Below are positions 27,014 to 60,186 of a stretch of DNA of 64,000 nucleotides, piece by piece (the stretch's first letter is position 1; the number at the start of each line of letters is the position of its first letter). The notes beneath the pieces were generated by a model. It made no database searches. It had not been told where the DNA came from and saw only the letters and a program-made list of their open reading frames with translations. Location: sequence record OR836606.1; one strand, 5' to 3'. The position numbers and the translations under genes are program-made.

Positions 27014-28485
27014 CTATTTACTAGCTTTTATACTCACATTTTTTGATTTAGGATTATTTAATAAATAAACCGCAATCTGCGAGTCTTTATTAAGTGAATA
27101 TGTTCTATTAAACAAACCATCATTATATGATATTAATTGATTGACTGGATCTTGTACTTTTAACATATCATACTGCTCTTCTGAAAATAAAGCTATAATA
27201 TTTAAAGTATCACCATCATAATCGGCACCCATTCCAGCTAAGATATTGTTACTAATACCTACTACAGCAGAATCAATATCATTAGTGATATCTTTAATTT
27301 TTAATATTTGAACTGAAGATTCTGAGATTGAAGGGTTCTTTTCATTAGACTATATCATTATCTTTTACTAAGATATATACTATTTAGTCGTTGAACAACT
27401 TATATTAAGTTGATGCTGATTAATTTTAATAAATCTTTTCAGCAATTAAGTATTATTAATTCATTAATATATTACTATATTAAGCCGCAACCCATTTTAC
27501 GGTTCAAAATTACTCTCATACCGCCTTCAGTTTTATTAACTAATTCTTTCATGTACTTATATACTTTAGGATTAAAGTTATCCAAAGCTTTACCTAATAT
27601 TTCTTCCGCTTTAGGTAATGGAATATTTTCTGTTACATACATTAAATTAGCCAATAATGGTTTATATATTTCTAAGAAGATTGTATAATTCATTCTAATT
27701 TCATTTAATTTTAAGTCAGGTGCTGGAACAATTACTGAACGAGCTGAATATCCTACTCGACTACCCATAATTAATTTACGAATAGTTCCCATTTTACCTT
27801 TAATATTCTCATTAATAATGCGCTCATAGATATTCATATTATCATCTTGAATTTTATTAAGTAAATTTAATTTCTGCAATTCAACTGAATCATCTGTATA
27901 ATGCTCATCTAATTCTTTAAGACTATTACTATGAGCAATTAATAAATTAAATTCTTTATTGATCTCTGAATGTCTAAATGTCTTAGTTGCCTTATTAACT
28001 GTGGCTGGTCTTAATTTAGGACTAAATACGGTTACATAATTTTGAAATAATGTTCCATTTAAATACCACTGAACAACCCTATTGTAATCTTTAGTTGAAC
28101 GTTTATCACGTTTAACTTCTTCTTTAAGAATTTTTAAAAAGTTCTTTCTAAATTCAACTAAACCAATATATGAATTATGATCATCTTCCGGTTCAATTAC
28201 ATTGCCATTCTCATCGATAGGTTTTTCAGAACTAATAATTTCAGCAAATCTTTTTCTACCTATTAGTTTTTTAATTCTATCATATCCTAAAGGCGTAATA
28301 ATATAGTTATTGCCTAAATAAATTATAGCTTCATTTGTAATATTATCTATATCTGAATCAGGTCCAAAGATTTTCTCACTGAAGATACCGTCTTCAGTGA
28401 AATCACCTTTCTTATCAATTGATTCATGATTAGTCACTACTGGTAATTTTGATAAATCTTTATTCTTAAGTAAAAATCTAGCCAT
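27014..28485 (-). CDS. RNA polymerase beta-prime-like catalytic subunit, spliced: join(28485..27499, 27337..27014)
   Basis: SARSVI and VILNR|NPSI join in frame to GADYDGD (cf. RpoC NADFDGD) once intron 27338-27498 is removed. Confidence 0.88.
27338..27498 (-). ncRNA. Minimal group I intron (161 nt)
   Basis: P/Q/R/S motifs TTAATTGCTGAAA, AATCAGCATC, GTTCAACGACTAAATA, GATATAGTCT; P1 CCGU/GCGG with U-G; P10 AACCC/GGGUU; terminal G; removal restores frame. Confidence 0.88.
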
Positions 28486-30107
28486 TACTCATCATCCTCT
28501 TCTACAATTTCTTCAATATCTAATATTACTTCATTATCTTCAGATTCTTTTTCTAATTTATCTAAATTGTCTGTATCGATATTTTCTCTGATGTTAGGTT
28601 TATTTTCAAAATAGAATGAACCATTTTCACCAGGATCTTTAACCTCACAGAATGGTGTCAATGTACGTGTAATACCTGGGTTATTTGAAGATGTTGCTAT
28701 TAAATCAATTCTACCAAAATAAGTATTATTTATATTAATAGTTCTAATAGATGGTTTACTAGTATCAACGGCAGTTTGCGGTCCTGCTTTAGTCATTTTA
28801 AGTATTCTAGTAAATAAGTCAATTGTATTAACTGCATTGGAATATCTGATTCCTTCAGATGTTCCTATAGTTTTTAATAAGAAGTCACGAGGAACACCTG
28901 AAAATAATCCTTTAAGATTTTTAATCGTACGCTTCTTATCTGTAAAATTAATCATACGATAAGACGTGTCAGAGTTCTTTCTATTTAATGGATAAGTTAA
29001 GTATTCTAATACTCTTAAACGTTTGTTAGCTAAATCTGTATTATCTAATAAATTAAGATTGTCAAAGTTTTTAAACATGTATTTAACTACATGATAAGTT
29101 GATTCTTTATCTTCCGGTTCTAATCTAGAAATATTTTTAGTACGATTATCTAATATACGATCAAATGATAAAATCATAGAATTAGCTTTTTCAATTTTAG
29201 TATCAACATTAGTAGAACCGCTAAATACGGATCCTAAATTCTTAAGCCAGAATTCTTTGTCATATACTTTATCTAATCCCACTCTCATACCTTTAAATAA
29301 ATCTTTAATACATAAAACCATAGAAGTTTTATATCTATCTTCTTGATCTAACCATTTCTTATCAACTTGAATAGTTATTTTATTATTAATTCTAAAATAA
29401 TAGTGGTTATCATCTTTTTCATCATTGGTATCTATTAACTTACAATATTTTTTAATGTCTAAGAATTCAAATGTTTCATTCAGACCCATTTTAGCAATAA
29501 AGAATAAAAAGGCTGGAACAGGTTTATTTTTATTAAACACTTCTAAGTATAATGTTCTACCTCTTAACTTCTTAGGCATTTTTTTATCATCATCAATGAG
29601 TTCATCCTTTTTAGAACCATTTACTGATAATGGTTGTAATAAGTTTTTCATTACTACTGTACTCGCTTTAGGTTTATAGAATTCAGTATCAGCTAATTGT
29701 AATATAGGGAAAAATTTATTATCGTTAATATAATAGTACTGACCTTCTATAAGTTCAGGAAAATCTAATTTATGCGTATATAATTCTTTTTCTCCTTCAG
29801 CCGACTCGAACTCTACAGTAATTTGAACTTCTAATAGTTTTGATTCTTCTACATTGATTTTTCTAAAATCTCTTGCTTTAAACTGTTTTTCTGTCATTTG
29901 ATTATACTCATATACTTCACTTGGAGGAACAACTTTACAATCAATAAATTTTACACCTTTAATAAATTCTACTGATTTGTAAATATCAGATATGATATCT
30001 TCTAGATTTTCATTTTGTCTAAAGTATATTGCATCTTCATTAAACGGTTCTTTTTTACTTACTTCGTCTTGTATATTCTTCGTAATTTTTCTTAAATAAC
30101 TGCCCAA
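28485..30107 (-). CDS. RNA polymerase beta-like subunit, N-terminal part
   Basis: NTYFGRIDLIATSSNNPGITRTL parallels RpoB [23 protein letters not shown]. Confidence 0.8.
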   Translation of the reverse strand: MGSYLRKITKNIQDEVSKKEPFNEDAIYFRQNENLEDIISDIYKSVEFIKGVKFIDCKVVPPSEVYEYNQMTEKQFKARDFRKINVEESKLLEVQITVEFESAEGEKELYTHKLDFPELIEGQYYYINDNKFFPILQLADTEFYKPKASTVVMKNLLQPLSVNGSKKDELIDDDKKMPKKLRGRTLYLEVFNKNKPVPAFLFFIAKMGLNETFEFLDIKKYCKLIDTNDEKDDNHYYFRINNKITIQVDKKWLDQEDRYKTSMVLCIKDLFKGMRVGLDKVYDKEFWLKNLGSVFSGSTNVDTKIEKANSMILSFDRILDNRTKNISRLEPEDKESTYHVVKYMFKNFDNLNLLDNTDLANKRLRVLEYLTYPLNRKNSDTSYRMINFTDKKRTIKNLKGLFSGVPRDFLLKTIGTSEGIRYSNAVNTIDLFTRILKMTKAGPQTAVDTSKPSIRTININNTYFGRIDLIATSSNNPGITRTLTPFCEVKDPGENGSFYFENKPNIRENIDTDNLDKLEKESEDNEVILDIEEIVEEDDE

Positions 30108-30297
30108 CGATATCTGACTCCCCTTATAATTAAAAATTCAAAACATATAAAAATTTAAGTTATTGCAAAAAATTATTTTTTTACAACTATGAAATTTCAT
30201 AACAATATTATATCATAAAATTTAGAAAAAAGCTAGTAAAATATTAACAATTTTCTAAAAAATTAAAAATATATTAAGTGGAAAGGAACTAATAAAA

Positions 30298-30600
30298 ATG
30301 TTAAATCAAATTCAAGATCAAAAACATTTCTTTAGAGAATGGTCTAGACGTACTGGATTAACACAAAGAGAATTAGTTGATGCTTATAGTGAGATGATAG
30401 AAATAATTGTTGAATCTGCAAATGATGCAGATCAAACTAAAACTATTATCCCTGAAATTGGTGTCCTCGAAGTTAAACCTGAAGATATGCGTAAACGTAG
30501 AAATCCTAGAACAAATCAAATTGTTGTTACAGATCCTACTCGTAAAGCACATCTACGTCTATATCCTAGACTTAAAGATCGTTTTAAACCTGAAAAATAA
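30298..30600 (+). CDS. HU/IHF-like DNA-binding protein
   Basis: IPEIGVLEVK...RKRRNPRTNQIV matches the HU beta-arm. Confidence 0.8.
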   Translation: MLNQIQDQKHFFREWSRRTGLTQRELVDAYSEMIEIIVESANDADQTKTIIPEIGVLEVKPEDMRKRRNPRTNQIVVTDPTRKAHLRLYPRLKDRFKPEK

Positions 30601-30606
30601 ATAATT

Positions 30607-30639
30607 TGCCATAATACACAATTTAAGTGTATTATGGCA
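30607..30639. terminator. Bidirectional terminator
   Basis: TGCCATAATACAC / GTGTATTATGGCA stem between convergent genes. Confidence 0.75.
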
Positions 30640-30645
30640 TTTTTA

Positions 30646-59263: not shown

Positions 59264-59310
59264 AATATACCAACTTTCTTAAATGTATTTTATTTTTTAA
59301 AGACCTAAAT

Positions 59311-59348
59311 AAAATACCTAATACCAATGGTTAGGTATTAGGTATTTT
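59311..59348 (-). terminator. Rho-independent terminator
   Basis: AAAATACCTAATACC / GGTATTAGGTATTTT stem flanked by T/A runs. Confidence 0.7.
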
Positions 59349-59367
59349 TTTTTATATACCAATCTAA

Positions 59368-59739
59368 TTAAAGCATGTTTAAATTATTCCATCTTGAATT
59401 TGGTTTTAACAAATCAGATCTTAATAATTCATCATTTAAACATGCTTTACCAGTATCTTCATTAATATACCAAATTTTAGCAAGATATCTTCCAAAAGCA
59501 TCAGATTTGTAAGTCTGCATTAGCAACTCTTTACCTTCTACACGTTCTTTAACAAATTCAGTTGCTTCTTTAAAATTTTCCTGCCCTCTTTCTGGAGTAT
59601 CCACATCAAGGATCCTTACTCTTCTTTTTGCACTTACATCAAAACCAAAATCAATAATAACGTCAATAGTATCCCCATCAACTACTTTTTCGCATTTTGC
59701 TTTAAAAATATATAAATCATCTTTACTAATATCATCCAT
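59368..59739 (-). CDS. Thermonuclease (SNase-like)
   Basis: VVDGDT, RVRILDVDTPE, DAFGRYLA; AAAGGA RBS before ATG at 59739. Confidence 0.85.
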   Translation of the reverse strand: MDDISKDDLYIFKAKCEKVVDGDTIDVIIDFGFDVSAKRRVRILDVDTPERGQENFKEATEFVKERVEGKELLMQTYKSDAFGRYLAKIWYINEDTGKACLNDELLRSDLLKPNSRWNNLNML

Positions 59740-60008
59740 TATATAACGTCCTTTTTTAAATGTATTATATAATATTGTTGAAATAAACTTCGAATTCAAT
59801 GATTAAATATATTTTATTTCTTTTCCTAACTTTTCAAATAGACCTTTATCATATCTATGTTTATTATAAAAAGCAAAATAAGATTTAGGACTGTCTTGTT
59901 AAACTTTAGGCATTGATTATAAATAATCGCTCCCTAAAGCTTCGTAAATACGCTTGGATCAGTAACTAGCGTGACGAGTAATCTCGACACTCCTAAAAAT
60001 AATTCTTG

Positions 60009-60186
60009 CATATTTACAATCTCTAAAATATTATTTTAGAGCACAGACTATATCATTACCTTAATGAGGTAGAATATATTTAGTCGTTGAACCTTCTATT
60101 CCAAAGGATGCTGATTAGTTTCAAACTTTCCAGCAATTAATATTTCTTTTTCATTAAAGATTTCTCTTTAAAGGGGCTGAAAATCA
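60009..60186 (-). ncRNA. Minimal group I intron (about 178 nt) in the NUMOD4/HNH-like gene; 3' site tentative
   Basis: Same P/Q/R/S core; P1 GGGU|UGA/UCAGCCC directly before P2 TTAAAGA-GAAA-TCTTTAA. Confidence 0.7.

What the first reader, a model, noticed from the sequence alone, without database searches (positions are those of the whole stretch)
27338..60186. One family of eight endonuclease-free mini-introns: how do they move and fold?
Seen: eight introns of 146-185 nt share near-invariant TTAATTGCT(G/A)(G/A), AATCAGCATC, GTTCAACGACTAAATA and (G/A)ATATAGTCT, with tiny P5/P6 and variable P9, at unrelated sites in four genes. None encodes a protein. Known: well-studied small group I ribozymes such as the Azoarcus intron are about 200 nt. 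Inferred: spread by reverse splicing or by trans-acting nucleases (the window has TnpB, HNH, LAGLIDADG and DUF559-type candidates), and possible reliance on a phage maturase.
Basis: partly seen in the sequence, partly recalled or inferred. Interest (0 to 1): 0.65.

Follow-up and report, generated by a model that had tools for sequence, protein, structure and literature searches.

The report
Miniature group I introns, Staphylococcus jumbo phage
Eight gene-less group I (self-splicing-type) introns of one family, seven only 146-185 bases long, interrupt RNA polymerase and nuclease genes of Staphylococcus jumbo phage LY01. The family has about 32 copies in this phage and none in some close relatives, so it is a very mobile, very stripped-down ribozyme that standard intron searches miss.

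Summary
The window is Staphylococcus jumbo phage LY01, nt 1-64000. All eight elements are real, on the minus strand, and carry exact or near-exact group I P/Q/R/S motifs.

- **Boundaries:** comparison with uninterrupted MarsHill genes gives introns of 161, 181, 177, 153, 185, 146 and 166 nt. The eighth is 296 nt, not a mini.
- **The eighth intron:** its 3' ~105 nt match the 3' end of two TnpB-carrying copies (IStrons) elsewhere in LY01.
- **Splice sites:** every intron ends in G and the upstream exon ends in U. P1 pairing with a U.G wobble is readable for seven; I2 is ambiguous.
- **Micro-exons:** 9, 18 and 19 nt (plus one of 44 nt) lie between neighbouring introns.
- **Structure:** covariation strongly supports P3-P8. 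I4 and I6 lack P2, I1 and I7 lack P9, and I6 lacks P8.
- **Detection:** Rfam misses all eight at its threshold.
- **Copy number:** LY01 32, Machias 29, AH12 29, PB50 22, Madawaska 11, MarsHill 10; S6, PALS_2, DC4 and SA1 have 0.

How they move is unresolved. TnpB, the phage reverse transcriptase and simple ORF loss at the same site each fail as a general cause.

Introns in this clade and swarms of ~206-nt group I introns in gut jumbo phages are already published. Earlier notes of this scan found the same family in other windows.

The parts
27338..27498 (-). I1, 161 nt, in the nvRNAP beta' N-terminal gene. P1 is CCGU/GCGG. P2 carries a GUAA loop. There is no P9.
   Evidence: MarsHill gp002 is uninterrupted and the junction is exact. 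R1 model 121 bits.
40962..41142 (-). I2, ~181 nt, first of four introns in nvRNAP beta-C. The 5' splice site is uncertain by 3 nt: LY01 reads HEN|PSGK against MarsHill HEPSGK.
   Evidence: Best Rfam RF00028 score 46.2 bits, E=2e-10, below the 50-bit threshold.
40953..40961 (-). 9-nt micro-exon (CCATCAGGT) between I2 and I3.
   Evidence: It matches MarsHill codons P-S-G. Only this reading keeps the frame.
40776..40952 (-). I3, 177 nt. P4 carries a compensatory G-C to A-U change.
40732..40775 (-). 44-nt exon between I3 and I4.
   Evidence: Aligns to uninterrupted MarsHill sequence.
40579..40731 (-). I4, 153 nt, no P2. P1 is GGGAU/GUCUC. The body is 95% identical to a MarsHill intron at another site of the same gene.
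40560..40578 (-). 19-nt micro-exon between I4 and I5.
40375..40559 (-). I5, 185 nt. P1 is CCGGAU/GUCCGG. The core is 97% identical to MarsHill and Madawaska introns that sit about 65 nt downstream and have a different P1/P2.
50875..51020 (-). I6, 146 nt, in vRNAP beta-N. P1 is an 8-bp helix (AGUUGGAU/GUUCAACU) closed by a U.G wobble. It has neither P2 nor P8.
   Evidence: Absent from MarsHill, present in Madawaska. The R-to-S spacer is only 13 nt.
50857..50874 (-). 18-nt micro-exon between I6 and I7.
50691..50856 (-). I7, 166 nt. P1 is GAGGU/GCCUC. P2 carries a GAAA loop. There is no clear P9.
59891..60186 (-). I8, 296 nt, in an HNH_3/NUMOD4 endonuclease gene. It has the family core plus a 3' extension homologous to the 3' end of two TnpB-bearing copies (a cargo-less IStron).
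   Evidence: MarsHill gp224 is uninterrupted. The 3' end ...TTTAACAAGACAG is shared with the elements at LY01 134.5 kb and 82.5 kb.
59803..59890 (-). Second exon of the HNH gene, encoding the conserved C-terminus.
   Evidence: Aligns with the MarsHill gp224 3' end.

Best explanation
These are genuine group I introns without cargo genes, members of one diverged family (core identity 53-97%, mean 67%). They split essential phage genes and must be removed from the mRNA by the normal group I route. In that route the internal guide sequence pairs with the end of the upstream exon (P1, U.G at the cut), guanosine attacks, and the terminal G marks the 3' site.

The ribozyme is cut down to P1, P3-P7 and short P5/P6. 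P2 with a GNRA loop, P8 and P9 are optional modules; the 146-nt I6 lacks both P2 and P8.

I infer that the family spreads between co-infecting phages at the DNA level, by recombination in the flanking exons. It rarely reaches new sites whose last 4-6 exon bases fit the guide sequence. Copies also exchange modules with each other. Cargo genes (Vsr-like homing endonucleases inside P6, TnpB after P9) come and go; I8 is a copy that lost its TnpB.

**Shown:** membership, boundaries, structure and presence/absence. **Inferred:** actual splicing, whether it needs a protein, and the way of moving.
For: **Motifs and structure**
- 8 exact R motifs against 0.05 expected.
- Eight copies: 93.5% of cells paired, 16 of 30 pairs changed on both sides, 0 of 500 shuffles as high.
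- 52 distinct copies from three phages: 95.4% paired against 33-54% when the partner is slid; covariation score 0.623 against 0.146.
- Rfam RF00028 aligns end to end at E=2e-10 to 0.2 on a short slice.

**Boundaries**
- Uninterrupted MarsHill genes give exact junctions with U before and G at the end, and restore the reading frame codon by codon.
- Exons of 9-19 nt cannot be separate genes.

**Dynamics**
- Copies per genome: 32, 29, 29, 22, 11, 10, 0, 0, 0, 0 across ten related phages.
- The same intron body occurs at different sites.
- LY01 copies at 176 kb and 131 kb are 97% alike. Their guides are GCUCUC and GCUCAC; their targets are GAGAGU and GUGGGU.

**Cargo**
- TnpB-bearing and endonuclease-bearing relatives share the same P/Q/S motifs.

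**Modules**
- 14 of 56 copies lack P8, and none of these has a P2 GNRA hairpin. 24 of the 42 with P8 do.
Against: - No RNA data exist for this phage, so splicing is not observed.
- All eight score below Rfam's gathering threshold.
- The helices are short and AT-rich. Minimum free energy is only -0.17 to -0.25 kcal/nt, with z-scores of -1.8 to -4.9, so unaided folding is doubtful.
- A core without P8 has, to my knowledge, not been shown to self-splice.
- The I2 P1 helix has no clean U.G pair, and its junction adds a codon relative to MarsHill.
- The P2/P8 association rests on related copies, so it counts few independent events.
Confidence: 0.8

Rival explanations
1. Spread by trans-acting DNA nucleases. 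Free-standing or intron-borne homing endonucleases, or TnpB with a guide RNA, cut the intron-less allele, and repair copies the mini-intron in (collaborative homing).
For: - The window and genome are rich in nucleases.
- I8 keeps the 3' part of the RNA that follows tnpB in two sister elements, directly next to its 3' exon.
- One mini-intron site (LY01 240.4 kb) is the same site that a 1.17-kb endonuclease-bearing intron occupies in MarsHill.
- TnpB occurs only in intron-rich genomes: LY01 has 6 and Machias 4.
Against: - AH12 (29 introns) and PB50 (22) have no TnpB.
- No nuclease gene is paired with any of the seven minis.
- The bases before the I8 site (TGGGT) differ from those before the two TnpB copies (ATTGT), so the same TnpB may not recognise the I8 site.
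- DC4 is reported to have several Vsr-like endonucleases (PMC10638138) yet has no family intron.
Confidence: 0.3
2. Spread at the RNA level. The excised intron reverse-splices into another transcript at a site that fits its guide sequence, is copied to DNA and recombines in.
For: - Near-identical intron bodies sit at different sites whose last exon bases resemble each other and fit nearly the same guide. Examples are GAGAGU and GUGGGU, and GGGAU (LY01 I4) and GGAU (MarsHill).
- These phages encode a reverse transcriptase (bioRxiv 10.1101/2020.12.14.422802).
Against: - Any insertion, however made, survives only if P1 can form, so the match is expected anyway.
- I5 and its 97% twin in MarsHill have unrelated P1/P2. 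That points to module exchange instead.
- SA1 carries the reverse transcriptase locus but has no intron.
- No reverse-splicing product is known for any phage (from memory).
Confidence: 0.15
3. Simple cargo loss in place. Each mini is what is left of an endonuclease- or TnpB-bearing intron at the same site.
For: - I8 fits this: both of its ends match TnpB-bearing sisters, and an RBS-like remnant precedes the deletion point.
- ORF-less IStron derivatives are documented (PMC4227781).
- Environmental contigs seem to carry the neighbouring nvRNAP-beta intron with its ORF replaced by 24 nt. This is weak: only 28 nt of flank.
Against: - For I1-I7, MarsHill and Madawaska show either an empty site or the same mini, never a cargo-bearing intron.
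- At the one shared site found, the two introns differ throughout apart from the universal motifs.
- About 30 sites per genome against a handful of cargo genes.
Confidence: 0.1
4. The introns no longer self-splice and depend on a phage or host protein (a maturase or RNA chaperone).
For: - P2, P8 and P9 are lost, there are no peripheral domains, GC is 20-27% and helices are 3-5 bp.
- The copies share near-invariant single-stranded joints that a common protein could read.
Against: - No candidate protein was identified.
- Engineered minimal group I ribozymes keep activity at high Mg (from memory).
- Similar ~206-nt introns of gut jumbo phages splice in vivo, but that says nothing about protein dependence (PMC12880540).
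Confidence: 0.4
5. They are not introns but repeated intergenic elements between separately translated gene pieces.
For: - Jumbo-phage RNA polymerase genes are naturally split (PMC7598289).
- The LY01 record annotates only separate ORFs.
Against: - Exons of 9, 18 and 19 nt exist between them.
- Uninterrupted alleles are restored exactly and in frame.
- The full group I core is supported by covariation.
Confidence: 0.02

Closest known systems
Predicted introns of MarsHill-like Staphylococcus jumbo phages (Korn et al., bioRxiv 10.1101/2020.12.14.422802; GenBank joins in MW248466 and MW349129)
   Same: Same phage clade and same host genes (RNA polymerase subunits, gyrB and others). Exon joins were predicted by protein alignment. 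I6 and I7 correspond to the two joins annotated in Madawaska vRNAP beta.
   Different: The preprint text I could search gives no RNA class, structure, family or copy census. LY01 has three times as many copies, none of them annotated. Sites I1-I5 and I8 are empty in those phages.
Group I intron swarms of gut 'Jug' jumbo phages (Sci Adv 2026, PMC12880540)
   Same: Many small ORF-less group I introns per genome (18.5 on average, mean ~206 nt) in essential genes. Splicing is backed by metatranscriptome reads for 37 of 76. My model also finds tandem ~160-190-nt copies in 200-400-kb IMG/VR contigs. I did not establish that these contigs are Jug phages.
   Different: Different hosts and phage lineage. 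The exact P-Q-R motif set of the Staphylococcus family is absent from IMG/VR and from 185,579 bacterial and archaeal genomes. The copies here are shorter (140-185 nt) and include forms without P8.
Azoarcus pre-tRNA-Ile group I intron (about 205 nt; from memory)
   Same: A minimal architecture without large peripheral domains, with GNRA loops on P2 (and P9) that dock on P8 (and P5).
   Different: Azoarcus is GC-rich and thermostable, keeps P2, P8 and P9, and is proven to self-splice. These introns are 20-27% GC, 20-65 nt shorter, and untested.
IStrons (group I intron plus IS200/IS605 or IS607 element; PMC4227781; bioRxiv 10.1101/2023.11.20.567912)
   Same: Two LY01 family copies carry TnpB after P9. 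A third IStron with a larger ribozyme splits gyrA in the window. Published group A IStrons end in TCAG; these end in ACAG. ORF-less derivatives and phage-borne IStrons are known.
   Different: No TnpA was found in LY01, MarsHill or Madawaska. I8 at 296 nt is shorter than the smallest IStron listed (482 nt). The seven minis have no IS remnant.
Collaborative homing of ORF-less phage introns with free-standing endonucleases (Bonocora and Shub; cited in PMC4227781; details from memory)
   Same: It explains how an intron without its own nuclease can still be driven into empty alleles in phage crosses.
   Different: No nuclease-site pairing has been identified here.

Membership tests
Group I intron (Rfam RF00028) | Score at or above the curated gathering threshold (50 bits). 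| tested here: not met
   No hit on the whole window, and none on 38 kb even at E<=0.1. On a 951-nt slice the scores are 46.2, 34.4, 26.5 and 16.2 bits, each aligned end to end. The shortfall comes from deleted P2, P5, P6, P8 and P9 positions.
Group I intron | Conserved core helices P3, P4, P5, P6, P7 and P8, with the P3/P7 pseudoknot, supported by covariation. | tested here: met
   P3, P5, P6 and P8 covary, P4 has one compensatory pair, and P7 is invariant. I6 and 13 other copies lack P8.
Group I intron | P1: the internal guide pairs with the 5' exon end, with a U.G wobble at the cut. | tested here: met
   I1, I3-I8 have U at -1 opposite G and 3-8 further pairs. I3 is weak (3 bp). I2 is ambiguous.
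Group I intron | A terminal G (omega G) at the 3' end of the intron. | tested here: met
   All eight end in G at the junction set by the uninterrupted alleles.
Group I intron | Guanosine-dependent self-splicing. | not testable with these tools
   No RNA runs hold this phage.
Group I subgroup IA2 (phage type) | P7.1/P7.2 extension between P3' and P8 (from memory). | tested here: not met
   Only 13-29 nt lie between the R and S motifs, enough for P3' plus a short P8 at most. The R and S sequences resemble phage IA introns, but the subgroup models were not available.
IStron (I8 only) | A group I intron fused at its 3' part to an IS200/IS605-type element encoding TnpB (with or without TnpA). | tested here: not met
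   I8 has no ORF. It shares the core, P9 and the last ~105 nt with two TnpB-bearing copies, so it is a derivative and not a full member.
Homing-endonuclease-bearing mobile group I intron | An endonuclease ORF inside the intron. | tested here: not met
   None of the eight has an ORF. Relatives with a 271-319-aa ORF after the Q motif exist in MarsHill.

The most novel reading that the evidence does not exclude
The 140-153-nt copies without P2, and in the smallest without P8, are the smallest natural group I ribozymes that still splice on their own. The family multiplies inside a phage genome by guide-sequence-directed insertion (reverse splicing). That would make it a compact, retargetable mobile ribozyme able to go from 0 to about 30 copies between phages that are about 91% identical.
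Probability: 0.15. Interest if true: 0.85.

Novelty: new variant of a known kind. Interest (0 to 1): 0.55.

Why it matters
- **For ribozyme research:** if these RNAs splice, they set a new lower size limit for natural group I ribozymes. They would also show that P2, P8 and P9 are dispensable modules in vivo, which bears on minimal-ribozyme design and on how the core folds.
- **For phage biology:** copy number ranges from 0 to about 32 among close relatives. That gives a rare natural system for measuring how gene-less introns invade, using simple phage crosses.
- **For annotation:** Rfam misses them at genome scale. LY01, and possibly other records, therefore list essential genes as unexplained fragments.

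Tried and rejected
- **Rfam:** nothing at the gathering threshold on the window and nothing in e-value mode on 38 kb. Only short slices give hits.
- **RNA evidence:** no RNA run holds the phage.
- **Metagenome contigs:** laying them on 40300-44300 gave fragmented pieces that break at the repeated cores. I draw no conclusion from them beyond one weak ORF-less joint.
- **Automatic junction finder:** the first version timed out. The second gave false positives above about 3 mismatches in this AT-rich DNA, so I trust only the low-mismatch calls and the hand alignments.
- **P1 heuristic:** it ranked the true 5' site first for only 4 of 8, so I give no exact borders for most copies outside the window.
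- **TnpB as the general driver:** rejected, because AH12 and PB50 are intron-rich without TnpB.
- **Reverse transcriptase as the driver:** weakened, because SA1 has the locus but no introns.
- **Literature:** searches for 'smallest group I intron' and for introns lacking P8 returned nothing useful. The AR9 genome paper and the journal version of Korn et al. are not held.
- **Joined exons:** none were sent to any search tool. Junctions rest on alignment to uninterrupted alleles, exon by exon.

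
Full report
**Identity of the window.** A 12-kb slice matches Staphylococcus phage LY01 (OR836606.1, 258,897 bp) at 100%, with the same coordinates. Its relatives are the jumbo phages MarsHill, Madawaska, S6, PALS_2 and DC4 (about 91-92% identity), SA1 (86%), and Machias, PB50 and AH12 (82-84%). The LY01 record annotates no intron. All exons are listed as 'hypothetical protein'.

**Observation.**
- The R motif occurs 8 times exactly, all on the minus strand, against 0.05 expected.
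- The Q motif is exact in seven copies.
- P (TTAATTGCT) and S (ATATAGTCT) are invariant in the eight-way alignment.
- These are the classical P, Q, R and S elements of group I introns. P pairs with Q to form P4, and R pairs with S to form P7.

**Boundaries.** MarsHill carries uninterrupted versions of three host genes: nvRNAP beta'-N (gp002), vRNAP beta-N around the I6/I7 sites, and the HNH gene gp224. It also has an nvRNAP beta-C gene that is empty at the I2-I5 sites. Pairwise alignments and exact string placement give the following.

| Intron | Window coordinates | Length |
|---|---|---|
| I1 | 27498-27338 | 161 nt |
| I2 | 41142-40962 | 181 nt |
| I3 | 40952-40776 | 177 nt |
| I4 | 40731-40579 | 153 nt |
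| I5 | 40559-40375 | 185 nt |
| I6 | 51020-50875 | 146 nt |
| I7 | 50856-50691 | 166 nt |
| I8 | 60186-59891 | 296 nt |

- In every case the upstream exon ends in U and the intron ends in G.
- Removing the intron restores the MarsHill reading frame codon by codon.
- The exons between neighbouring introns are 9, 44, 19 and 18 nt. This rules out separately translated gene pieces.
- P1 helices with U.G at the cut can be read directly for I1 and I3-I8. Examples are I5 (CCGGAU/GUCCGG) and I6 (an 8-bp helix).
- I3 is weak (3 bp). I2 has no clean U.G, and its best junction adds one codon relative to MarsHill, so its 5' site is uncertain by 3 nt.
- I sent no joined exon sequence to any search. The junctions rest on these alignments.

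**I8 is not a mini.** Its first ~165 nt look like the others. The insertion relative to MarsHill gp224 is 296 nt, and only this removal restores the conserved C-terminus.
- Two other LY01 family copies (R motif at 134651+ and 82460-) are followed, after P9 and an AGGAGG ribosome-binding site, by 400- and 407-aa ORFs.
- Both ORFs are TnpB: they match HTH_OrfB_IS605, OrfB_IS605 and Cas12f1-like_TNB.
- The two elements share 1662 nt at 88.7% identity and end in ...GATTTAACAAGACAG.
- The last ~105 nt of I8 are homologous to this end, and I8 ends in ...AGTTTAACAAGACAG.
- I8 is therefore a cargo-less derivative of an IStron-type family member. It sits inside a homing-endonuclease gene.

**Structure.** I wrote a core structure (P3, P4, P5, P6, P8, with P7 as a pseudoknot) on the eight-way alignment.
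- It gives 93.5% paired cells and 16 of 30 pairs with changes on both sides. No shuffle out of 500 reached this, and pairing falls to 32-50% when partners are slid.
- A covariance model built from it retrieved 53 copies from LY01, MarsHill and Madawaska.
- On that alignment, 95.4% of cells pair against 33-54% when slid, and the covariation score is 0.623 against 0.146. The alignment is fitted to the model, so this figure leans towards the structure. The slid controls still separate clearly.
- P5, P6 and P8 are 3-7 bp.
- I1, I2, I3, I5, I7 and I8 have a P2 with a GNRA loop. I4 and I6 have no P2. I1 and I7 have no real P9.
- I6 has only 13 nt between R and S, enough for P3' and J8/7 but not for a P8.
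- Across 56 copies in three genomes, 14 lack P8 and none of these has a P2 GNRA hairpin. Of the 42 with P8, 24 do.
- This fits joint loss of a loop-receptor pair like the one in the Azoarcus intron (from memory). The P8-less copies are related to each other, so independent events are few.
- P8-less copies persist at the same sites in gyrB and vRNAP beta in several phages. This argues that they work.
- Minimum-free-energy folds recover most helices but are weak: -0.17 to -0.25 kcal/nt, with z-scores of -1.8 to -4.9.

**Why annotation misses them.** Rfam finds nothing at its threshold and nothing on 38 kb in e-value mode. Only a 951-nt slice gives RF00028 at 46 to 16 bits. The DC4 paper reports that Rfam found no intron there (PMC10638138). 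My model agrees for this family, with 0 copies in DC4.

**Census and dynamics.**

| Phage | Family copies (model hits, E<=0.001) |
|---|---|
| LY01 | 32 (34 by motif census) |
| Machias | 29 |
| AH12 | 29 |
| PB50 | 22 |
| Madawaska | 11 |
| MarsHill | 10 |
| S6, PALS_2, DC4, SA1 | 0 |

- Of the eight window sites, I1-I5 and I8 are empty in MarsHill and Madawaska. For I8 in Madawaska, only the downstream flank was aligned.
- I6 and I7 are empty in MarsHill but occupied in Madawaska.
- Core identity within LY01 averages 67% (range 53-97%), so this is an old, diverged family and not one recent burst.
- Several near-identical bodies sit at different sites. LY01 I4 is 95% identical to a MarsHill intron elsewhere in the same gene. 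LY01 I5 is 97% identical to MarsHill and Madawaska introns about 65 nt downstream, with unrelated P1/P2. LY01 copies at 176 kb and 131 kb are 97% identical, and their guide and target differ by one co-varying position.
- The smallest copy with a secure border is 140 nt (LY01 176199-176338, in vRNAP beta'). It has a 36/36-nt match to the empty Madawaska junction and a 7-bp P1.

**How they move.**
- *Simple ORF loss in place* is not supported for I1-I7. No relative examined has a cargo-bearing intron at those sites. At the one shared site found (LY01 240.4 kb against a 1.17-kb endonuclease intron in MarsHill), the introns differ throughout apart from the universal motifs.
- *TnpB* is not general. 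LY01 has 6 and Machias 4, but AH12 and PB50 have none. No Y1 transposase was found in LY01, MarsHill or Madawaska.
- *The phage reverse transcriptase* is present in SA1, which has no intron.
- *Guide-target similarity* of sister copies is what reverse splicing predicts. It is also what survival of any insertion requires, so it does not decide the question.
- *Best reading:* transfer by exon-flank recombination in mixed infections, perhaps boosted by double-strand breaks from the many nucleases. Rare ectopic insertion and exchange of modules between copies would add to this. All of this is inference.

**Comparison with what is known.**
- Korn et al. predicted introns in these genes from protein alignments.
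- Jug gut phages carry on average 18.5 group I introns of about 206 nt, and some are confirmed by metatranscriptome reads.
- My model finds similar tandem ~160-190-nt copies in large IMG/VR contigs. The exact P-Q-R motif set is absent from IMG/VR and from the bacterial genome set.
- IStrons, their ORF-less derivatives and phage-borne IStrons are described.
- Earlier notes of this scan reported the same family in other windows.
- New here: exact borders for these eight; forms without P2, P8 or P9; the 0-to-32 copy range; bodies shared between sites; and the IStron origin of I8.

**Verdict.** This is a real and well-supported feature, and a new variant of a known kind. It is of clear interest to ribozyme and phage-mobility specialists. 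Its function and mobility are still untested.

Noticed in passing
window 53609-55607 (- strand): gyrA is split by a precise 1998-nt insertion relative to MarsHill gyrA (nt 2742/2743). The insertion holds group I-like P, Q, R and S motifs (at 55493, 55466, 55297 and 55172) followed by a 406-aa TnpB ORF (55044-53824). This is a full IStron with a larger ribozyme than the mini family. Neither Rfam nor my model detects it.
   Followed up: partly
window ~41656-43102 (- strand): A larger intron in nvRNAP beta-C holds a 370-aa ORF (41825-42937) with a weak DUF559/Vsr-like match (E=0.0047) and an S-like motif near 41755. My model gives a weak hit at 41711-41838 (E=0.0056). Metagenome contigs seem to carry it with the ORF replaced by 24 nt, but the flank is only 28 nt.
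   Followed up: partly
window 62341-63483 (- strand): A second TnpB ORF lies downstream of gyrB, in a stretch that MarsHill and Madawaska fill with other genes. LY01 has six TnpB genes in all, Machias four, and the other eight relatives none. No TnpA was found in LY01, MarsHill or Madawaska, the only three searched for it.
   Followed up: partly
LY01 134.5-136.2 kb and 80.9-82.6 kb (L038, L035): Two IStron-like elements consist of the mini-family core plus TnpB. They are 88.7% identical over 1662 nt, are inserted after ...GGATTGT and end in ...AACAAGACAG.
   Followed up: yes
LY01 176199-176338 (L040): A 140-nt family member without P2 and P8 sits in the vRNAP beta' gene. It is the smallest copy with a secure border. 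The MarsHill CDS for this gene ends at 113191, inside a model hit (113155-113314), so that join may be mis-set.
   Followed up: partly
window 55600-58362: The N-terminal part of gyrA carries an intein with a LAGLIDADG_3 domain, as in MarsHill. One gene therefore holds both an intein and an IStron.
   Followed up: no
window 61182-62000: A metallo-beta-lactamase-fold protein gives a sub-threshold match to the anti-Pycsar Apyc1 family (30.5 bits against a cut-off of 50). MarsHill annotates the homologue as RNase Z-like.
   Followed up: no
window 40300-44300, runs X1-X6: Relatives of this phage region occur in clothing, indoor, soil and other metagenomes. Their contigs break at the repeated intron cores, so short-read assemblies of such phages will be fragmented at these introns.
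   Followed up: partly
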